DNA of 63,735 nt, filler included, from Octopus bimaculoides (GCF_001194135.2; 10 parts of 10 records of this genome joined end to end with filler, not necessarily neighbours in it), one strand, 5' to 3'; positions 10,500-31,539 are shown, numbered from the whole stretch's first letter. Numbers and translations are program-made. Notes: generated from the letters alone by a model not told the origin.

Positions 10500-12200
10500 A
10501 TTAATACCACCCTTTTAGGCTTCGGAAGAGCGCAATGCGCTGGAACAACTATGGCAAATTATTCGGTCCAACATCGTAAACTAAAAGAAAAGCCTATTTG
10601 ATTTTAACTCAGACCGCAATGCGCTGGAACAACTGTGGCAAATTATTTGGTCCAACATCGTAAACTAAAAGAAAAGCCCATTTAACTTTAAGTGAGCACG
10701 AACACAACTTAAGCCACGAGCCCGTCTGTAGACTTATAATCCCTCCCCACTTGAAGTAAAATAGGTTTAGCAGCCCCAAAATTACTAAATCATATTAATA
10801 ATAGAATTAAGAAGCTACAAAAAGTACAGCAATGGTCAAAAAGTAACACTGTTTTAGACAAATTTAGGAATATAAAATACAAATATAGAGCTAAATTTAG
10901 ACCAATCGACAATGTGGATTTTTACCCTTCGATCGAGGTTCTTGTTGGACAAAGCAAAAAAGTTCGCCAGAAAAAATGTCACCATTGACCAAACAGATCT
11001 TGAGTTTATCATGTATGCACGAAAAACTCTCTTCTTTTGGAAGAGTTTAGCAGGAGTCAAGAATCTGAACAAGGAGAAGTATTTGATGTATCGATGGATT
11101 TGTATGATAGTACTGGCATATTTGATCTTGTAGGACCGCTTATATCAATATCTTAATATTTAAGGTTCCCTCCCATACTATGATACTGTATGAAGCATAT
11201 CCCGCAGCTGTGGTGGTCATACTTTCGATACATTTAGGAAAAATCTCATTTAGATCTCTGTATTATAATAATAAAAAATCTCACTAAAATTTATTTCTTA
11301 GACGCTTCCTAGGACCAACTCTTATACTCTTACAAGCCCTACCATAAACCCAATGAAAAAATTACGTATATACACAAGCAGTCTTGTCACCCACCGATCG
11401 ACTTTAAAAACCTTATAGACAATATTAGTAATAGGATATAATATCTTTCCTCCTTTTAGGAAATATTCGATTAGGCAACTCTCCTACAATAATAACGCCC
11501 TGGCCAACAAAATTTTTAACTAGAAGTTAACTTGCACTACGACCATAAAAAGAGAGAGGCATAAAAAAAGATTATATCGCACGATCCTCACTTTCTCTTT
11601 GAATGTTAAGACAAACATAGGTGGGAAATTCCTAGCCTTGATAGATAAGCATCTCCCGGATAGCCATAGATATAAGAAAATCTTTTGATAGGTATTTTGT
11701 GAAAGTTCCTTAAAGCTGCTGTCCCAACATGACAAACATTATTACACGTAAGTCACACGAAGCGACCAATCCAAACTGTAAATTCAGGAACACAGACACT
11801 TGTCTACTCGACCAGGCATGTATAATTAGCTCAGTTGTATACGATGTCGAGATCACTTCAGTTCTATCAAATAAAGAAGCCGAGAAGAAAAAAATATATT
11901 GGACTATGTGAATGTGACTTCAGAAAAGATAAGCCTTCTTTCTGGTACGTATAACAAGAAGAAAACCTATATGCTAGCAAGCCACATCTGCAACATGAAG
12001 GCGAGAAGTACTCCTCCCCACCACACATCATCAAGTGGAACATCGTTGAGCGATCTACATACAATAATGGGTCACGGAGATGCAGGATTTGTAAAGCCGA
12101 AATAGCTCATATCCATCTTAAACTGAAGAACTCCACCGATCCATTGAAAACGGGGTCAGAGATTTTCACAAGATGCAAACATCTCAGCATTTTTTGTTAT
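10500..12200 (+). mobile_element. Decayed Penelope-like retroelement (Neptune-like): RT + Cys linker + GIY-YIG endonuclease
   Basis: Frame-broken motifs in the expected order: [132 protein letters not shown]. Confidence 0.85.
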
Positions 12201-12883
12201 CGAACTGGAGAGCACACCACTCTCCGGATTAGACAAAGTCTTAAAAACTTCAGCCTTTCCTCATTGGATTAATTCCCACAATCATTATTAATTCATATAT
12301 AAATTTTACCGTAATCCCCCTTCTAACCGCCTAAAGGGACATAACTTTTATATCCCTTCCTCTTTAAGTTTCCTTTCTTCGTTTCATTCATTTTTTTCCC
12401 GGTTTTACTATATTTTCTCGTCACATAACAATTTCTAAATGTATGTGTGTGCGTGTGCGTTTATGGGTGTGCATTTTTGTGTGCGTGTGTATGAGTGTTA
12501 GCCTGTATGTGTGTTTGTGTGTGTGTGTGTGTGTCTGTGTGTGTGTGTGTGTGCGTGTGCGTGTGCAATTGTCATTTACTGTCTATATATTTATTCATAC
12601 AAATAAAGAATCGGAGTTTGCAACTTAGTACGGCTGAAATTCGTAACAAAGTATATAATGTGACCGGTAAGTGTGCATGTGCGAGTGTCTGTCAGTATGT
12701 ATGTATGTGAGTATGTATGTTTGTATGTATATGTGCATGTATCTCTCTCTCTCTCTTCCCCCCTTCTCTCTCTCCATCTCTCCATCTATTTATTCTCTGT
12801 TCCACGTCTCTGCGTGTATGTGCTAGTGCGTGAGCGTGTGTGAGTGTGTGTGTGTGTGTGTGTGTGTCTGTGTCTCTATGTTT

Positions 12884-24604: not shown

Positions 24605-25058
24605 CGATGTTGTTTGTAAATAACAGAATTATTTAAAACCTCCGCCCATTCTATANNNNNNNNNNNNNNNNNNNNNNNNNNNNNNNNNNNNNNNNNNNNN
24701 NNNNNNNNNNNNNNNNNNNNNNNNNNNNNNNNNNNNNNNNNNNNNNNNNNNNNNNNNNNNNNNNNNNNNNNNNNNNNNNNNNNNNNNNNNNNNNNNNNNN
24801 NNNNNNNNNNNNNNNNNNNNNNNNNNNNNNNNNNNNNNNNNNNNNNNNNNNNNNNNNNNNNNNNNNNNNNNNNNNNNNNNNNNNNNNNNNNNNNNNNNNN
24901 NNNNNNNNNNNNNNNNNNNNNNNNNNNNNNNNNNNNNNNNNNNNNNNNNNNNNNNNNNNNNNNNNNNNNNNNNNNNNNNNNNNNNNNNNNNNNNNNNNNN
25001 NNNNNNNNNNNNNNNNNNNNNNNNNNNNNNNNNNNNNNNNNNNNNNNNNNNNNNNNNT

Positions 25059-25348
25059 GGGCGTTGTGAGTGTTTATTGAGCGAAAACACCTAAAGCTCC
25101 ACGAGATCCGGCAGGGGATGGTGGCGAACCCTGCTGTACTCTTTCACCACAACTTTCTCTCACTCTTACTTCCTGTTTCTGTCAGCCTTGTTACACTCTG
25201 TGTCACGCTGAATATCCCCCGAGAACTACGTTAAGGGTACACATGTCTGTGGAGTGCTCAGCCACTTGCACGTTAATTTCACGAGCAGGTTGTTCCGTTG
25301 ATTGGATCAACTGGAACCCTCGTCGTCGTAAGCGATGGAGTGCCAACA
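25059..25348 (+). mobile_element. SINE family B (5' end in gap)
   Basis: Near-identical to 5283-5595. Confidence 0.85.
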
Positions 25349-25649
25349 AATATATATATATATATATATGTTGTGCATTGGTGTGTGACGAGAAGTTTGT
25401 TACCCAACTACATGGGCTCGAATTCAGTCCTACTGTATCAATCATGGGACAAATGTCTTTTTTTATATTCTTGGTGCTTTGGTAGAAATTGTTACTTGCC
25501 AAAATTCAATAATAGCAAAGAAGTAGTTTTAACTATTGGTTCTTTAGGTAGCGCTGCTATGCTACTTCCGGTAGAAAGAACTGCAAACTCTGTTTTCGGA
25601 TTGGCCTTAGGTAACCACTAAATTTGTAATATTGGTTTTAAAACTTTGA

Positions 25650-25830
25650 CATAAGGCCAGAAAGTTTGTGGGGAGGGGCTAAGTTGATTTCATTGAGTCC
25701 AGTGCTCAACAAATACTTATTCTATCGACCCTGGAAGGATGAAAGGCAAAGTTGACCTCACCAGAATTTGAACTAAGAGCATATAGACTGCCAATATGCC
25801 ACGAAACATTTTGTCTGTTATGCTAACGAT
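25650..25830 (-). mobile_element. SINE family C
   Basis: TTCTATCGACCCTGGAAGGATGAAAGGCAAAGTTGACC, reverse complement of the family core. Confidence 0.7.
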
Positions 25831-26109
25831 TTTCCGCAAGTAAATATTAAAAGTTTCTCTTGTTAGTCATGCTCTGGACATCAGCTTTCGTTTTTCAAAA
25901 CTATTTTACAGATCGCGACCGGTTCACTGACAGAATTCAGTGCTGAATTTTACAGATTATGGATGTTCTAAAGTTGTTGCCCTGTTTGTTCGCGTTGTGT
26001 TTTTGTAAGTTTTCTTCCGTTTTTGTTTTTTAGAGTCTTTTTTTTTTTTTTTTTTTTGCTAAGATTTATTATTTTTCTAAGAATAATTGTCACATATCAT
26101 TTACATTAA

Positions 26110-26327
26110 CCCTTTAGTGTTCAAATTAATGTCAAAAGTAATCCTTATTCATGTACACTTTAAAAAATTAATCTGGTATTATCTTGTTACTTCAAGATTT
26201 GAGAGATGTAAATATTTATTTTTAGAATGACATTGCAGGGTAGATGTGAGATACTGGTTCTGGCCAGTTTGGGCATAAAATGAGTAGAATATTTGGGCTG
26301 GATATAGCCGGTTTAAACACTAAAGGG
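26110..26327. mobile_element. piggyBac-like MITE
   Basis: TTAA|CCCTTTAGTGTT ... AACACTAAAGGG|TTAA: perfect 12-bp TIRs with a TTAA target duplication. Confidence 0.85.
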
Positions 26328-27799
26328 TTAAATTGTGAGCAATATTCTCCCACTAGTTTTTCATTTTTGTTTTTATAATATGTTATGNNNNNNNNNNNNN
26401 NNNNNNNNNNNNNNNNNNNNNNNNNNNNNNNNNNNNNNNNNNNNNNNNNNNNNNNNNNNNNNNNNNNNNNNNNNNNNNNNNNNNNNNNNNNNNNNNNNNN
26501 NNNNNNNNNNNNNNNNNNNNNNNNNNNNNNNNNNNNNNNNNNNNNNNNNNNNNNNNNNNNNNNNNNNNNNNNNNNNNNNNNNNNNNNNNNNNNNNNNNNN
26601 NNNNNNNNNNNNNNNNNNNNNNNNNNNNNNNNNNNNNNNNNNNNNNNNNNNNNNNNNNNNNNNNNNNNNNNNNNNNNNNNNNNNNNNNNNNNNNNNNNNN
26701 NNNNNNNNNNNNNNNNNNNNNNNNNNNNNNNNNNNNNNNNNNNNNNNNNNNNNNNNNNNNNNNNNNNNNNNNNNNNNNNNNNNNNNNNNNNNNNNNNNNN
26801 NNNNNNNNNNNNNNNNNNNNNNNNNNNNNNNNNNNNNNNNNNNNNNNNNNNNNNNNNNNNNNNNNNNNNNNNNNNNNNNNNNNNNNNNNNNNNNNNNNNN
26901 NNNNNNNNNNNNNNNNNNNNNNNNNNNNNNNNNNNNNNNNNNNNNNNNNNNNNNNNNNNNNNNNNNNNNNNNNNNNNNNNNNNNNNNNNNNNNNNNNNNN
27001 NNNNNNNNNNNNNNNNNNNNNNNNNNNNNNNNNNNNNNNNNNNNNNNNNNNNNNNNNNNNNNNNNNNNNNNNNNNNNNNNTATTCCGACCAGGCAGTTCA
27101 CTAACACAACTCAGTCACTGATAGTGACTGTTCTTTAGATAAAACTACAGCTTTGAATCTGCTCAGGTTTATCTTTCTCTGGAGTTTCCCATTGATGAAG
27201 GCTAATGAGCCAGAATCACTCATCGGGGAATCCACTAGTACAGTGGTTTTCAACCGGGGTCAATATAGCAGCTGGGGGTCCATATAAGATTTTGATGTTA
27301 CAATTTATGTATAGTTAAGGGTACACGTGTCTGAGGAGTGCTCAACCACTTGCATGTTAATTTCACGAGCAGGCTGTTCCGTTGATCGGATCAACTGAAA
27401 CCCTCATCGTCATAAGCAATGGAGTGCCAACAACAACAACATTCACACTCACAAACATAGATGCATGTGTGATTTGATTAATTCCGTTGCATTTGCTAGT
27501 TCGTAATGGATGGTGTTTCCACAGTGATGTAATTTGCTTGAAGTCCACCACAAAAGCATGTCTATGCTTCTTGATGTGTTGCACAATGTTAGTAAACAAA
27601 AGGCTCGTTTATACGGTGTCATTTGTTTCCAGTTCATTGTGTAAAACATGTCCAGGCTGTTTGCTATTCTATAGACTGGAATAAGATAGCTTTGTTTGGA
27701 AACAGATGGAGGTTAGTGACAGGAAGAGCATCCTACTGGTGGAAATGAAAACTCTGATCCATTCAAGCTTGGAAAAGTAGGCGTTATAACAATGATGAT

Positions 27800-28022
27800 C
27801 TTTTGCCGTGAAGAATTTGTAGTCAAATGAACGAATCCCAATATTTATTTATTTTAAGACTGGTACTTATTCTGTTGGTCTCTTTTCCAGAGCCACTAAG
27901 TAATAGGGACGTAGACACACCAGAACGAGTCAGGCCGAGGCTATAGTAGAAGACACTTGCCCAAGGTGCCGCATAGTGGGACTGAACCCAGGACCATGAA
28001 ATTGAGAAGCAAACTTCTTACC
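27800..28022 (-). mobile_element. SINE family A remnant abutting the exon acceptor
   Basis: GGGACTGAACCCAGGACCATG...AAGCAAACTTCTTACC is the reverse complement of the SINE head. Confidence 0.75.
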
Positions 28023-28039
28023 TGATTTCTTTATTTCAG

Positions 28040-28288
28040 AAATTGTTGAGCTCCAGAAGAGTACCACTCTTTATATCAATTTCCCAAATATGGAAAGACC
28101 AGTGGAGTGGAAATGTAAAAATTATACATACGAATGCGACAAGACGTGCGCTAGCACCACTGAATTTCAAGTGACCCAGAGTGGGAATGATTCCACTCTT
28201 TGGATTCGAGACGTTACGAATGAATGTTTGTCTTGGACATTTTATGACAACAACAACAACTTTGGAAAATTTGATTTGAAGACAAATG
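28040..28288 (+). CDS. Internal exon (phase 1-1, 249 nt) encoding a divergent Ig-like ectodomain, copy 1
   Basis: TTTCTTTATTTCAG| acceptor and G|GTAAGG donor; stop-free IVELQKSTTLYINFPNMERPVEWKCKNYTYECDKTCASTTEFQVTQSGNDSTLWIRDVTNECLSWTFYDNNNNFGKFDLKTN; C-strand-like W, STLxIxxV E-strand-like motif, N-glycosylation sequons NYT and NDS; paralogous exon at 30479. Confidence 0.75.
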
Positions 28289-28321
28289 GTAAGGAAATGA
28301 TTTATTATAACAACAACAATA

Positions 28322-28356
<35 letters not shown>

Positions 28357-28576
28357 AATAATAAGATAAATACATAACAAAAACAGCAGAAGTAACATAT
28401 ATATATATATGACATACAGAAAATAGCACAAGTAGGCACCACACACATCCTACGTAAAAACACTTTCAGTACAATAAAAATAAGAGCATCATAACAAACC
28501 ACAGCACATACCCAAGGGACGCAGAGCTGCGCTCGGTAGTGCAGTGAAAGTACGTGATAATAATAAGACTACTGGA

Positions 28577-28740
28577 TAATAATAATAATCCTTTCTACTA
28601 TAGGTACAGGACCTGAAATTTTGAGGGAGGGAAATACTCAATTACATTGACCCCAGTGTTTCACTGGTACTTGATTTATTGATCCCGAAAAGGATGAAAA
28701 GCAATGTCGACTTTGACGGAATTTGAACTCAAAATGGCAT
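28577..28740 (-). mobile_element. SINE family C downstream of exon copy 1
   Basis: Family core in reverse; a counterpart lies downstream of exon copy 2. Confidence 0.7.
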
Positions 28741-29899
28741 CTCAAAACGAGAACTGTTCCTGTTATGGTGGGGGCCCTAGGTATGTTAAAAAAGGGGATG
28801 TCAGAAACATGTAGATAATATCGCAGGAGAACCATGTCTCAGAGAAATCCAAAAGATTGTGCTGACAAGTACCGGCCGCAACTTTACAAAAACCCAATCA
28901 GTTTAAGTTCAATTATTTATCGTCTGCTTGCTTAAAAACTTATATTTCTTCGTAAAGTTTGGATTCGCCAGAAACAAGCTGCCCAAAAACGATGTGCAGA
29001 TATGAAGCACGGATTGGAGAGAAACAGCGAGAAGGTATAGCAAAACGAGAGAAAAGAAAACATTGACAGATATGCGAGAAAAGGAAGACGAACATCAAGA
29101 ATATTTAAAGGAAGCTAAACTATGAATGCTATAAAAATGCAAATCCTTTCTTTCTTAACTAGGTCCCCTTAATTTTTTCCATTCCATTCAATTTCCATGG
29201 ATCCCACTAATAATATATTATTGTGACAGGAAGTGAAATAACTTTAAATAATGAAAGTAAAAACACANNNNNNNNNNTTGGTGTTTCCCATTGATGAAGG
29301 CTAATGAGCCAGAAACAGAAGCATGCATCAAGGAATCTACTAGAGCAGTAGTTTTTAATAGGAGTCATACACCACACACCTGTTCAGTCAACGTCAATTT
29401 GATGGAGAGTGTTAGCTAACGTACAGCACATACAGTTGATCACTATAAACAAATCAATGGTGCCGGTCATTCAGCAAGCACTGCACACTCATATGTCTTC
29501 TTCTATCGGAGATTCTATCATACATATATATGCACACTCACATACACGCATCTGTGTTTGTTTGTGTGTGTGTGTGATTTCGTTATTTCTCTTGCATTTT
29601 CTGGTTTGTAATCAACGGCTTTCCCAACGATGCCATTTGCTTGATGTCCACCACAAATGCATGTCTTGGCTGCTTGATGTGTTGCACAATCTTAGTAAAT
29701 AAAAGGCTCATTTATGCAGCGTCATTTGTTCCCAGTTCTTTGTGTAAAACATGTCCAGGATGTTTGTTATTCTATAGACTGGGATATTATGGCCTTGTTT
29801 AGAAATAGGAGTTTGGTGACAAGGAGAGCATCCTCCTGTTGGAAATGACAACTCTGATCCCTCAAATGTGGAAAAATAGGCATTAAAACGATGATAATC

Positions 29900-30137
29900 T
29901 CTTACTCGTTTCAGCCATTAAAGTGTGGGCATACTGGGGCACTGCCTTGAAGAATTTTTAGTCGAATGAATTGACCCCAGTACTTATTTATTTTAAGCTT
30001 GCCTGGTACATATTCTATTGGTCTCTGTTGCTGAACCACTAAATTACAGGGACAAAAACACACCAACACCGATTGTCAAGGGGTGGTGGGGGACAAACAC
30101 ACACAAAGAAACTCACACATATATATGTATGTATGTG

Positions 30138-30171
<34 letters not shown>

Positions 30172-30461
30172 ATATATAACAGAAATATGTTAGAAAACAA
30201 AATAGAAACTACCCGTGGAAATTTAAGGGGAAAGTATACACATATAGATAGATAGTTAGATATAGGTATATATATACACATATATATATGTGTGTATATA
30301 TATACATACAAACACACGTCAGGCTTCTTTCAGTTTCCATTTATGAAATCCGCTCATAAGGTGTTGGTCAGCCTGTGACTATAGTAGAAGTCACTTTTCT
30401 CAAGGTTGCACAGAGTGGGACAGAACCCAGAACCATGTGGTTGGGAAGCACACTTCTCACC
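29900..30461 (-). mobile_element. SINE family A with expanded internal microsatellite, abutting the exon 2 acceptor
   Basis: Reverse complement of the full family body. Confidence 0.8.
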
Positions 30462-30478
30462 TGATTTCTTTCTTTCAG

Positions 30479-30581
30479 ATAATGGTACATTCGACGTAAG
30501 TGCAACTTTACAGATTGAAACACCAAACATGAAAAGACCAACCATTTGGAAATACAACAATTATAAATATGAATGTGACCG
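30479..30581 (+). CDS. Ig-like exon copy 2 (5' part; remainder lost in N gap 30582-30732)
   Basis: TTTCTTTCTTTCAG| acceptor, phase 1 compatible with the copy 1 donor; (D)NGTFDVSATLQIETPNMKRPTIWKYNNYKYECD aligns without gaps to copy 1 (17/33 identical). Confidence 0.7.
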
Positions 30582-30734
30582 NNNNNNNNNNNNNNNNNNN
30601 NNNNNNNNNNNNNNNNNNNNNNNNNNNNNNNNNNNNNNNNNNNNNNNNNNNNNNNNNNNNNNNNNNNNNNNNNNNNNNNNNNNNNNNNNNNNNNNNNNNN
30701 NNNNNNNNNNNNNNNNNNNNNNNNNNNNNNNNAC

Positions 30735-31020
30735 TGCCCCCTGCTCCGCAGAAATTTCAGGCCTTTTGTCTAAAGTAGAATAGAAAAGAATTATCCTTTC
30801 TACTAAAGGCACAAGGCCTGAAATTGTGGTGGTGGTGGGGGGGGGGGCTAATCGATTATATCTATCCCAGTGTCTCACTGGTACTTAATTTATCAGCCCC
30901 GAAAGGATGAAAGGCAAAGTCAACCTTGGTGGAATTGGAACTCAGAACGTAAAGATACAGAAAATGCTGGAAAGCATTTTGCCCAGCGTGATAATGATTC
31001 TGCCAGCTCACCACCTTAAT
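30735..31020 (-). mobile_element. SINE family C downstream of exon copy 2
   Basis: Full family body in reverse, ending GATTCTGCCAGCTCACCACCTTA. Confidence 0.75.
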
Positions 31021-31539
31021 AATAATAATAATGATAATATCGGGGGGTTTTCTGAAAATCCGCCCAGAGCTTTAAACGGAGAATTCTATTTTACATACAT
31101 ACGCACGTACGTACATACATATGTACGTACGTACGTACATACATACATCCGTACATGCATATATTTTTTGGCTTAAATAACTTCCCACCTATAATAAGCG
31201 CCCATGGGCAGTAATATGGAAGTTTAATAGCACTCAGTATTTCACTAATGGTATATGATGTTTTGATATATGTTCTTTTGACTCCATTATTGGAGTACCA
31301 GTATATTAAGTACCAGTGAAACACTGGGGTTGATGTAATCGACTCATCTCCTCTCCCAAAATTTCAGCTCTCTCTCTCTCTCTCTCCCACACACACACAC
31401 AGAAAGAGAGAGAAATCAACAGAAAGAGTCGAGTTTTNNNNNNNNNNNNNNNNNNNNNNNNNNNNNNNNNNNNNNNNNNNNTTAATTAATTAANNNNNNN
31501 NNNNNNNNNNNNNNNNNNNNNNNNNNNNNNNNNNNNNAT

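What the first reader, a model, noticed from the sequence alone, without database searches (positions are those of the whole stretch)
27181..31020. Candidate lineage-specific Ig-like receptor built by tandem duplication of an exon plus intron module
Seen: two modules (about 27181-28740 and 29278-31020) repeat the same order of parts: CCCATTGATGAAGGCTAATGAGCCAGAA, hAT-MITE end, a shared intron block, antisense SINE A, acceptor, exon, antisense SINE C. Copy 1 is a symmetric phase 1-1 exon and copy 2 starts in phase 1. Established: one-domain-per-exon phase 1-1 structure is typical of Ig-superfamily ectodomains. The domain has the C-strand W and an LxIxxV E-strand pattern but lacks the canonical B-F cysteines, carrying WKC, ECDKTC (CxxxC) and ECLSW instead. 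Inference: a non-canonical Ig-like family that I cannot assign to any named gene, possibly an immune, adhesion or chemosensory receptor family. Signal, TM and tail exons are not visible and may lie in gaps 26388-27080 and 30582-30732 or beyond the linker at 31438.
Basis: partly seen in the sequence, partly recalled or inferred. Interest (0 to 1): 0.8.

Follow-up and report, generated by a model that had tools for sequence, protein, structure and literature searches.

The report
Octopus-only Ig-like membrane protein gene
The repeated exon-plus-intron modules are real and belong to a gene of an uncharacterised, octopus-restricted family of cell-surface proteins built from tandem immunoglobulin-like domains; it is a moderately interesting new branch of a very well-known protein kind, and its function is still unknown.

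Summary
Window 27081-29267 and 29278-31437 are two collinear copies of one module (four blocks, 72-78% identity, offsets 2099-2438 nt). Each holds an intact or cut phase-1 exon: A1 at 28040-28289, and A2 from 30479, cut by the gap.

The exon is coding. It hits 23 proteins at E<1e-10. Every family member with a source name is an 'uncharacterized protein' of Octopus bimaculoides, O. sinensis, O. vulgaris or Argonauta hians. These proteins have a signal peptide, 1-4 tandem ~97-aa domains, a transmembrane helix and a short tail.

With a 31-sequence family alignment, AlphaFold2 gives pLDDT 95.3. All top Foldseek matches are Ig domains (antibody VL, titin/twitchin I-set). The canonical B-F cysteines are absent. 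W24, C33 and C37 (ECDxTC) are near-invariant.

- Each domain is encoded by two phase 1-1 exons. A 39-51-nt mini-exon precedes the 250-nt exon. In the window both mini-exons fall in assembly gaps.
- The signal-peptide exon is visible at 25959-26004.
- The tail exon of an upstream paralogue sits at 15720-15794, so this is a tandem gene cluster.
- The module duplication predates the gene duplications.

Function (adhesion or recognition) is inferred, not tested.

The parts
15720..15794 (+). Last coding exon (cytoplasmic tail, ...PYIWIRTRVIKWQSHKKYQNPPQA, then stop) of an upstream paralogue. Its 5' part is lost in gap 15378-15717.
   Evidence: tblastn hit to the tail of family member P0010 (E 5e-4, 57% identity); translation.
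25959..26004 (+). Signal-peptide exon of the gene in question: ATG, MDVLKLLPCLFALCF plus 1 base, donor t|gtaagt, leaving in phase 1.
   Evidence: Matches the N-termini of family proteins (P0005 MDVHMLFFCVFALCFC, P0016, P0012). Sequence.
26388..27080 (.). Assembly gap that most probably hides the first mini-exon B (about 39 nt, inferred A strand).
   Evidence: The block 27081-27260 right after the gap is homologous (82-87%) to the sequence lying about 120-160 nt downstream of mini-exons in L001 and L002.
27081..27262 (+). Conserved intronic block that follows mini-exon B. It contains the anchor TTTCCCATTGATGAAGGCTAATGAGCCAGAA.
   Evidence: (D14).
27466..27922 (+). Shared intron block, copy 1 (partner 29571-30065).
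   Evidence: blastn 74.7% over 501 columns, E 3e-99; D4 85% ungapped.
27929..28039 (-). Antisense SINE fragment plus the polypyrimidine tract and acceptor (cttacctgatttctttatttcag) directly abutting exon A1.
   Evidence: D11: 85% to the copy at 18151-18244. The same context precedes exon A in L001 and in L002 d1 and d2.
28040..28289 (+). Exon A1: 250 nt, phase 1-1, encoding strands A'-G of an Ig-like domain ((E)IVELQKSTTLYINFPNMERPVEWKCKNYTYECDKTCASTTEFQVTQSGNDSTLWIRDVTNECLSWTFYDNNNNFGKFDLKTN(G)).
   Evidence: All near-invariant family residues are present (W24, E32, C33, C37, V45, W66, F68, D70, L80).
28581..28740 (-). Antisense SINE ('SINE C'), copy 1.
   Evidence: D13/D9, I2 and I4. A sense copy lies at L001 8355-8520.
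28741..28880 (+). Degenerate fragment that I read as the 3' end of a LINE reverse-transcriptase ORF, downstream of exon A1.
   Evidence: Translation ...TVPVMVGALGMLKKG... resembles L001 10270-10450 ...TTIPVIVGSLGMIKKG.... The LINE assignment is from memory and was not tested.
29268..29277 (.). Nominal 10-N gap whose flanks are not contiguous. The expected site of the second mini-exon B and about 260 nt of flanking intron.
   Evidence: see the observation check.
29279..30478 (+). Module 2 intron: the anchor block (29279-29367), the shared intron block (29571-30065), a module-2-specific insertion holding microsatellite DNA (about 30066-30366, inferred from the offset change between collinear blocks), and the antisense SINE with acceptor (30367-30478).
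30479..30581 (+). Exon A2, first 103 nt ((D)NGTFDVSATLQIETPNMKRPTIWKYNNYKYECD). It enters in phase 1 and is cut by the gap.
   Evidence: 78% nt identity to domain-2 exon of LOC106867739.
30582..30732 (.). Gap expected to hold the remaining ~147 nt of exon A2 and its donor.
   Evidence: Length by homology to A1 and to L002 d2. Not testable.
30786..30947 (-). Antisense SINE C, copy 2.
   Evidence: 74%, E 6e-26; D13, D9.

Best explanation
The region is the 5' half of a gene on the + strand for a single-pass type I membrane glycoprotein. The gene belongs to a family found so far only in octopods. No protein identical to this exon turned up in the protein database searched.

The ectodomain is a string of ~97-aa immunoglobulin-like domains that look I-set-like. 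They lack the canonical B-F disulfide and instead carry an invariant C-strand Trp, a near-invariant E-C-D-x-T-C motif, and a co-occurring extra Cys pair.

Each domain is encoded by a two-exon module: a 39-51-nt mini-exon (inferred A strand, consensus 'xxAETYEITQN') followed by a 250-nt exon (strands A'-G). All these exons are phase 1-1. Unequal crossing-over between modules therefore adds or removes whole domains in frame, and exon skipping stays in frame. The module introns already carried SINE insertions before the modules duplicated.

The window shows the signal exon (25959-26004), domain exon A1 (28040-28289) and the start of domain exon A2 (30479-). The two mini-exons and the rest of A2 are lost in assembly gaps. 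Further domain exons, the transmembrane segment and the tail should lie beyond 31437. An upstream paralogue ends at 15794, so the genes sit in a tandem cluster.

Shown: the repeat anatomy, the exon phases, family membership, the predicted Ig fold, the family architecture and the octopod-only distribution among database hits.

Inferred: that this copy is expressed and functional, and that the protein acts as a cell-surface adhesion or recognition molecule whose domain number and composition vary by duplication and cassette splicing.
For: - Repeat anatomy and exon phases.
- Family: a profile HMMER search of 1.84 billion representatives gave 29 hits, 23 of them at E<1e-10. The 19 family representatives looked up include 17 named octopod proteins (Octopus and Argonauta) and 2 unnamed Logan assemblies; the other look-up, P0025, was the Tribolium hit. 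The closest relative, P0001 (LOC106878976), is 97% identical.
- Architecture: signal peptide, 1-4 domains and a transmembrane segment are read directly from the sequences.
- Exon map: LOC106867739 has a signal exon, three mini-exon/large-exon pairs and a transmembrane exon. Splice contexts are conserved.
- Signal exon in the window.
- Fold: AlphaFold2 with the 31-sequence alignment gives pLDDT 95.3 and pTM 0.84, with seven strands of at least 3 residues plus a short N-terminal one. The top 50 Foldseek PDB matches listed are Ig domains or Ig-containing chains, with TM 0.6-0.75. A profile search of PDB returns weak matches, most of them Ig-like domains: titin, CD2, obscurin, CD79b and alphavirus E1.
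- Pfam: I-set is the recurrent best near-threshold hit, 23.6 against a cut-off of 23.7.
- Coding constraint: dN/dS is 0.23-0.39 for 9 of 10 pairwise comparisons.
- Cysteines: positions 26 and 63 co-occur (12 both, 15 neither, 4 mixed; p = 5e-5).
- Cassette use: two O. sinensis isoforms differ by exactly one 13-aa mini-exon.
Against: - There is no transcript or protein evidence for this particular copy.
- Both mini-exons, 60% of A2 and everything downstream are unseen, so this copy could be a broken paralogue.
- Splicing the signal exon directly to A1 would create TAA. The model therefore depends on a mini-exon hidden in gap 26388-27080.
- Sequence-level homology to Ig families never reaches a curated threshold. 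hhalign against single Ig sequences is not significant. The Ig assignment therefore rests on a predicted structure.
- The model covers exon A only. The A-strand role of the mini-exon is inferred.
- The tails show no recognisable signalling motif, so 'receptor' is loose.
- The octopod restriction rests on a shallow 3-sequence profile and on whatever cephalopod proteomes the library holds.
Confidence: 0.82

Rival explanations
1. This is a decaying, non-functional paralogue. The window copy is a pseudogenised or partial duplicate within the cluster. The exons look intact only because the duplication or a gene conversion is recent.
For: - No protein identical to this exon was found in the 5.8-billion-sequence database.
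- The closest relative, L001, sits on an unplaced 49.6-kb contig.
- 211 of the 250 exon nt differ at only one site from L001. That could reflect recent conversion rather than selection.
- The essential parts lie in gaps.
Against: - A1 has canonical splice sites, no stop codon, and all nine near-invariant family residues.
- The signal exon has an ATG and a donor in the correct phase.
- A2 is open as far as it can be read.
- The lack of an annotation is readily explained by the five gaps in this 6-kb stretch.
Confidence: 0.13
2. This is a repeat-borne or transposon-derived ORF. On this reading the 2.1-2.4-kb unit is a macrosatellite or composite transposable element that happens to carry an open frame, not a host gene.
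For: - The module is saturated with SINE and LINE fragments, and microsatellites lie around and between the modules.
- Copies of the module occur at several genomic sites.
Against: - The ORF has no transposase, reverse-transcriptase or other TE match in Pfam.
- Relatives are complete proteins with signal peptide, domains and transmembrane segment, encoded by conventional multi-exon genes.
- dN/dS is below 1.
- The SINE pieces occur elsewhere without the exon (D11).
- The predicted fold is a confident Ig domain.
Confidence: 0.02
3. The gene encodes a secreted or otherwise non-membrane product. It would produce a soluble multi-Ig protein, such as a haemolymph or mucus lectin-like factor, rather than a membrane receptor.
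For: - The transmembrane exon is not visible in the window.
- Several database relatives are short and end without a transmembrane segment (P0008, P0009, P0015, P0022).
Against: - Most of the longer, apparently complete relatives end in a hydrophobic helix plus a basic tail (P0002-P0006, P0010, P0012, P0016).
- The transmembrane-less ones look like truncated models, for example those ending in an NNNNNNSF read-through of the intronic microsatellite.
Confidence: 0.03

Closest known systems
Octopus bimaculoides LOC106878976 (P0001, 105-aa RefSeq model, 'uncharacterized protein'; locus L001 on LGKD02070975.1)
   Same: The exon A product is 97% identical. Acceptor and donor contexts, the downstream (AAT)n and the LINE fragment are the same. 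Mini-exons lie before and after it.
   Different: It is a different locus: the introns are about 87-93% identical. 17 of the 18 exon differences are clustered in the first 39 nt. The RefSeq model is itself a fragment. It starts at an internal Met and reads through the mini-exon donor into the intron. A frameshift in the upstream mini-exon copy shows that the stretch beyond the donor is intronic.
Octopus bimaculoides LOC106867739 (P0033/P0003, three domains plus transmembrane segment) and O. sinensis LOC115225115 (P0002, four domains plus transmembrane segment, with multiple RefSeq isoforms, up to X12 seen)
   Same: The domain is the same (60-63% identity to A1). LOC106867739 has the same mini-exon plus 250-nt exon module, and both have a signal peptide of the same style. 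A2 is of the 'domain 2' type, WKY/WRY without Cys26.
   Different: They are paralogues, not the same gene. They are complete models, whereas the window copy is interrupted by gaps.
I-set Ig domains of titin, twitchin and MyBP-C (PDB 1waa, 3uto, 2k1m)
   Same: These are the best structural fits: TM 0.70-0.75 and rmsd 2.4-3.0 A over 86-88 columns. From general knowledge, many of them also lack the B-F disulfide.
   Different: Sequence identity is only 15-16%. They are intracellular muscle proteins. They have no ECDxTC motif. Pfam I-set scores stay just under the threshold.
CD2/SLAM-type small IgSF surface receptors (type I membrane proteins; by general knowledge the N-terminal V-like domain lacks the canonical disulfide)
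   Same: CD2 is among the best PDB profile hits (1hnf, E 0.059). The overall plan is the same: signal peptide, a few Ig domains, a transmembrane segment and a short tail.
   Different: The match is not significant and there is no evidence of homology. The vertebrate family has different exon structure and different tail motifs.
Clustered, diversified adhesion-gene families, such as the octopus protocadherin expansions (general knowledge)
   Same: Both are lineage-specific tandem gene clusters that encode repeated extracellular beta-sandwich domains.
   Different: The domain type is unrelated (cadherin versus Ig-like). No functional parallel was tested.

Membership tests
Immunoglobulin superfamily (Ig-like domain, I-set/V-set) | Two-sheet Greek-key beta-sandwich of 7-9 strands | tested here: met
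   The AF2 model has pLDDT 95.3 with strands B, C, C', D, E, F and G plus a short A'. All of the top 50 Foldseek PDB hits are Ig domains or Ig-containing chains. This is a predicted structure, not an experimental one.
Immunoglobulin superfamily (Ig-like domain, I-set/V-set) | Sequence match to a curated Ig profile at its gathering threshold | tested here: not met
   Pfam I-set scores 23.6 bits against a cut-off of 23.7 for P0002, and 21.6-21.7 for the others. Ig_3 scores at most 14.8. The single exon gives no Ig hit. hhalign against titin I27 and a V-kappa gives E 0.14 and 0.045.
Immunoglobulin superfamily (Ig-like domain, I-set/V-set) | Conserved B-strand and F-strand cysteines forming the core disulfide | tested here: not met
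   The B-strand position (I13) is I, V, T or A in 31 of 31 domains. F68 is F, V, Y or I in 31 of 31. This feature is typical of Ig domains but not obligatory.
Immunoglobulin superfamily (Ig-like domain, I-set/V-set) | Invariant C-strand tryptophan about 11 residues after the B-strand core position | tested here: met
   W24 is invariant in 31 of 31 domains and lies 11 residues after I13. It aligns with the V-kappa W35.
Immunoglobulin superfamily (Ig-like domain, I-set/V-set) | Domain exons bounded by phase-1 introns | tested here: met
   A1 is 250 nt and phase 1-1. A2 enters in phase 1. The mini-exons of 39 or 51 nt are also phase 1-1. However, each domain is split over two exons.
Octopod uncharacterised Ig-like transmembrane family (LOC106878976, LOC106867739, LOC115225115 and others) | Significant sequence similarity across the ~84-aa core, with the family's near-invariant residues | tested here: met
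   23 representatives at E<1e-10. A1 carries W24, E32, C33, C37, V45, W66, F68, D70 and L80.
Octopod uncharacterised Ig-like transmembrane family (LOC106878976, LOC106867739, LOC115225115 and others) | N-terminal signal peptide on its own exon ending in phase 1 | tested here: met
   Window 25959-26004, MDVLKLLPCLFALCF with donor t|gtaagt, matches the N-termini of P0005, P0012 and P0016.
Octopod uncharacterised Ig-like transmembrane family (LOC106878976, LOC106867739, LOC115225115 and others) | A mini-exon (39-51 nt) preceding each large domain exon | tested here: inconclusive
   No mini-exon is visible in the window. The block that follows mini-exons in L001 and L002 starts right after gap 26388-27080, and is truncated at gap 29268-29277. 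Both mini-exons are therefore expected inside gaps.
Octopod uncharacterised Ig-like transmembrane family (LOC106878976, LOC106867739, LOC115225115 and others) | C-terminal transmembrane helix and short cytoplasmic tail | not testable with these tools
   These lie beyond the end of the piece (31437). A tail exon of the upstream neighbour is seen at 15720-15794.
Pfam ELLD (PF25309, endolysin-like domain; the one paper that uses the term describes a phage ejectosome) | Score at or above the 27-bit gathering threshold on a natural protein | tested here: not met
   The score is 18.8-19.2 bits on the exon and on P0001. Only 2 of 31 family domains hit at all. The 28 bits were reached only on an artificial two-domain concatenate. 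The match is spurious.
Transposable-element protein | Match to transposase, reverse-transcriptase or integrase families, or TE termini around the ORF | tested here: not met
   There are no such Pfam hits. The flanking SINE and LINE pieces are separate insertions in the introns.

The most novel reading that the evidence does not exclude
The family is an octopod invention used as a diversified cell-surface recognition code, either for self/non-self or for neuronal or sucker-epithelium identity.

On this reading, variation arises in three ways: tandem gene and module duplication, cassette use of phase 1-1 mini-exons and domain exons, and patchy gene conversion or diversifying change focused on the A'-B strand edge.

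The hints are as follows:
- 17 of the 18 differences between two otherwise near-identical paralogous exons lie in 39 nt.
- The exons are more diverged than the adjacent intron.
- dN/dS is about 1 for the N-terminal third of A2 against its closest paralogue.
Probability: 0.12. Interest if true: 0.75.

Novelty: new member of a known kind. Interest (0 to 1): 0.45.

Why it matters
Octopods have no antibody-type immunity and are known for lineage-specific expansions of surface-molecule genes. This family is too diverged for Pfam to recognise. It is therefore labelled 'uncharacterized' in every genome, and I found no paper that mentions it.

Recognising it as a clustered, multi-isoform Ig-like membrane protein family gives cephalopod biologists a defined candidate set for adhesion or recognition functions. 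It also provides a domain alignment that can be used to annotate it.

The locus is also a clean example of domain gain by duplication of a symmetric-phase two-exon module whose splice acceptor sits at the edge of an old SINE.

It does not change any general principle. Ig-like domains without the core disulfide, split Ig exons and tandem IgSF clusters are all known.

Tried and rejected
- Single-sequence AlphaFold2 of the exon gave pLDDT 42 and was uninformative. It was replaced by the alignment-based run.
- The Pfam ELLD hit was rejected. ELLD is a domain whose only mention in the paper library is a phage ejectosome study. The hit is below threshold and appears in only 2 of 31 domains.
- phmmer of the exon against PDB gave only E>1 matches.
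- The search for homologous proteins with the family alignment returned only 2 proteins. Its word index evidently misses the family. The taxonomic picture therefore rests on the one exhaustive HMMER run, made with a shallow 3-sequence profile.
- The Tribolium hit P0025 matches only 25-30-aa stretches, each with E>0.005, and was rejected as spurious.
- The look-up of encoding contigs for P0002 found nothing.
- Rfam found only sub-threshold mir-297-type hits on microsatellites and no tRNA hit for the SINEs.
- I looked for the mini-exon and for transmembrane exons in the visible window by tblastn. None was found for this gene.
- Four literature searches for the LOC identifiers and for octopus Ig-like families found nothing relevant.

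Full report
**1. Observation**

The piece is 14507-31437 of the window. It is broken by eight internal N runs.

The repeat finder and blastn of 27081-29267 against 29278-31437 show four collinear blocks:

| Copy 1 | Copy 2 | Identity | Offset |
|---|---|---|---|
| 27180-27262 | 29279-29367 | 77.5% | 2099 |
| 27466-27922 | 29571-30065 | 74.7% (E 3e-99) | 2105 |
| 27929-28140 | 30367-30579 | 72.3% | 2438 |
| 28581-28734 | 30786-30947 | 74.2% | 2205 |

The offset jump between the second and third blocks points to a module-2-specific insertion at about 30066-30366, a stretch that holds microsatellite DNA.

The exon in copy 1 is 28040-28289. It is 250 nt long, with acceptor tttatttcag| and donor |gtaagg, and it is open in only one frame. 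It enters with two bases that complete a codon and leaves after one base, so it is phase 1-1. Copy 2 begins at 30479 in the same phase and runs into the gap at 30582 after 103 nt.

**2. Gaps (the scan program's question)**

Gap 29268-29277. In the related loci L001 and L002, a 39-51-nt mini-exon is followed about 120-160 nt later by a conserved block (tattccgaccagg...tttcccattgatgaaggctaat). This block is window 27081-27260 (82-87% identity). Module 1 shows the whole block, starting immediately after gap 26388-27080. Module 2 starts only at the equivalent of 27180. So the nominal 10-N gap hides at least the first ~100 nt of the block, the ~160 nt upstream of it, and the mini-exon. The flanks are not contiguous, and no reading frame crosses the gap.

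Gap 30582-30732. The left flank is inside exon A2 (...YECD, then CG). The right flank is non-coding SINE-related sequence (I6, D13). By homology, 147 nt of exon are missing. They would just fit in 151 N, but the gap length is only an estimate. Continuity and frame cannot be tested.

**3. The exon is coding and belongs to a family**

The word-indexed protein search found one relative, P0001. This is O. bimaculoides LOC106878976, an 'uncharacterized protein', 97% identical.

The exhaustive HMMER search of 1.84 billion representatives found 29 proteins, 23 of them at E<1e-10. Look-ups show that every named family member is an uncharacterised or hypothetical protein of O. bimaculoides, O. sinensis, O. 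vulgaris or Argonauta hians. Two others come from unnamed Logan assemblies. The one non-octopod hit, from Tribolium, matches only short weak stretches and is spurious.

The sequences share one plan:
- a signal peptide (for example MDILKFFCCLSALFCLTSA);
- one to four tandem ~97-aa domains;
- in one subfamily, a second Cys-rich domain;
- a hydrophobic transmembrane helix;
- a short basic tail.

In a 31-domain alignment (A2), W24 and C33 are invariant. E32, C37, V45, W66, F68, D70 and L80 are at least 90% conserved. A1 has all of them.

Pairwise Nei-Gojobori estimates between paralogous exons give dN/dS of 0.23-0.39 for 9 of 10 comparisons. That indicates purifying selection on the protein.

**4. 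Gene structure**

The annotated paralogue LOC106867739 (locus L002) maps as follows:
- a signal exon;
- three pairs, each a mini-exon (36-39 nt by the tblastn map, 39 nt in the first two read directly...HYKIIQS...ETYEISQN...ETYITQN) followed by a large exon of about 250 nt;
- a transmembrane-plus-tail exon.

L001 shows the same alternation. Its upstream mini-exon copy shifts frame just beyond the conserved g|gtaaatgg donor. So the RefSeq model P0001, which reads through that donor, is wrong there.

The mini-exons share the context catcttttacag|...g|gtaaatgg. The large exons of the window, L001, and L002 d1 and d2 share cttacctgatttctttatttcag|. All of these exons are phase 1-1.

The true module is therefore two exons per domain, not one. 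The mini-exon sequence (Y-x-I-x-Q) looks like an Ig A strand. This is an inference, because the second structure job covered exon A only.

Two O. sinensis isoforms of LOC115225115 differ by exactly one 13-aa mini-exon. This suggests that these cassettes can be alternatively spliced, at least in the RefSeq isoform models.

**5. What else is in the window**

A signal exon lies at 25959-26004: ATG, MDVLKLLPCLFALCF, one further base, then gtaagt. It matches the N-termini of P0005, P0012 and P0016. Spliced directly to A1 it would give TAA. That fits the requirement for an intervening mini-exon, expected in gap 26388-27080.

At 15720-15794, directly after gap 15378-15717, the + strand encodes PYIWIRTRVIKWQSHKKYQNPPQA followed by a stop. 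This is similar to the cytoplasmic tail of P0010 (E 5e-4). A paralogue therefore ends about 10 kb upstream on the same strand, and the genes form a tandem cluster. This agrees with the many family loci that share a single 21.3-Mb O. sinensis contig.

A2 is 78% identical to the domain-2 exon of LOC106867739, but only 61% identical to A1. The module duplication is therefore older than the gene duplication.

**6. Fold**

Alone, the exon folds poorly in AlphaFold2 (pLDDT 42). With alignment A2 it gives pLDDT 95.3 and pTM 0.84. The strands are at residues 9-14, 22-26, 29-33, 43-48, 51-56, 65-69 and 75-79, with a short one at 2-3.

Foldseek against the PDB returns only Ig domains or Ig-containing chains among the top 50 hits: antibody VL, twitchin Ig26, titin I27, I81 and I21, NCAM2 Ig1 and MyBP-C C0. 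The best geometric fits are I-set domains, with TM 0.70-0.75 and rmsd 2.4-3.0 A.

A profile search of PDB sequences gives only weak hits, most of them Ig-like: titin, CD2, obscurin, CD79b, myotilin and alphavirus E1.

Pfam I-set is the recurrent best hit but always falls just under its threshold. The ELLD hit is spurious.

The canonical B-strand and F-strand cysteine positions are filled by hydrophobic residues in all 31 domains. Cys26 and Cys63 are present together or absent together (12 both, 15 neither, 4 mixed; Fisher p = 5e-5, not corrected for phylogeny). That suggests a non-canonical disulfide.

N-glycosylation sequons are frequent at two positions, in 18 and 15 of the 31 domains.

**7. 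Interpretation**

The best-supported reading is a gene for an octopod-restricted type I membrane glycoprotein with tandem I-set-like domains. Because the exons are symmetric in phase, domain number changes in frame through unequal recombination between modules and through cassette splicing.

A role in cell-surface adhesion or recognition follows from the architecture only. The tails carry no motif I could recognise.

Rival readings, in decreasing order of likelihood, are: a dead paralogue, a secreted product, and a TE-borne ORF. The main uncertainty is whether this particular copy is intact and expressed.

**8. Novelty**

The protein kind (IgSF-like surface protein) is very well known. Ig domains without the core disulfide and Ig domains split across exons are known too.

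What is new is the recognition that a set of 'uncharacterized' octopod genes forms one clustered Ig-like family with a distinctive ECDxTC signature and a two-exon module. I found no paper that mentions it.

I rate it a new member of a known kind, of moderate interest.

Noticed in passing
window 28040-28078 compared with L001 9951-9989: The window's exon A1 and the L001 exon differ at 18 of 250 nt, and 17 of those lie in the first 39 nt (A'/B strand; 7 of 13 residues change). The remaining 211 nt differ at one site, and the upstream intron is 92-93% identical. This looks like a gene-conversion patch or very local diversification.
   Followed up: partly
window 27940-28039 and 30379-30478; L001 9851-9950; L002 about 10898-10997 and 12534-12633: The last ~100 nt of intron before the large exon (antisense SINE remnant plus polypyrimidine tract) is 74-86% identical among paralogous modules. 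The exons themselves are only 60-72% identical in all but the two closest pairs (W_A1/L001 93%, W_A2/L002 d2 78%), with synonymous p of about 0.5. The intron flank evolves more slowly than the coding sequence. Possible causes are a splicing constraint, conversion, or accelerated exon change.
   Followed up: partly
window 15720-15794: This is the cytoplasmic-tail exon and stop codon of an upstream family member on the same strand, cut by gap 15378-15717. It shows a tandem gene cluster.
   Followed up: partly
window 25959-26004: This is the signal-peptide exon of the gene in question.
   Followed up: yes
window 18682-18943 and 19230-19529: A minisatellite with a 19-nt period lies on both sides of gap 18925-19248 (D1).
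   Followed up: no
window 22040-22303: A near-perfect inverted repeat has 118-nt arms, 95% complementary, separated by 28 nt (I1). It is AT-rich and may be a foldback element or MITE.
   Followed up: no
window 28741-28880; L001 10270-10450: Both copies carry, downstream of exon A, a degenerate fragment that I read as the C-terminus of a LINE reverse transcriptase (...IPVIVGSLGMIKKG...). If so, the insertion predates their divergence.
   Followed up: partly
window 29145-29256 compared with L001 10751-10864: This intronic segment is 85% identical between the two loci but in opposite orientation. That implies an inversion, an inverted TE copy, or a misoriented contig next to gap 29268-29277.
   Followed up: no
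window 30117-30315 and 31092-31164: Rfam mir-297, mir-3149 and mir-466-type matches fall well below their gathering scores and lie on (TA)n/(TG)n/(TACG)n microsatellites. They are artefacts.
   Followed up: yes
L002 1803-3074 (minus strand): A C2H2 zinc-finger gene lies next to LOC106867739. An O. sinensis model (P0021, 'zinc finger protein 239-like') fuses zinc fingers to a family Ig-like domain. This is probably a gene-model chimera of such neighbours.
   Followed up: partly
family proteins P0013, P0018, P0020, P0023, P0026, P0028: One subfamily, which includes the Argonauta members, has a single N-terminal domain of this type followed by a different Cys-rich domain of about 90 aa before the transmembrane segment. 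That second domain was not analysed.
   Followed up: no
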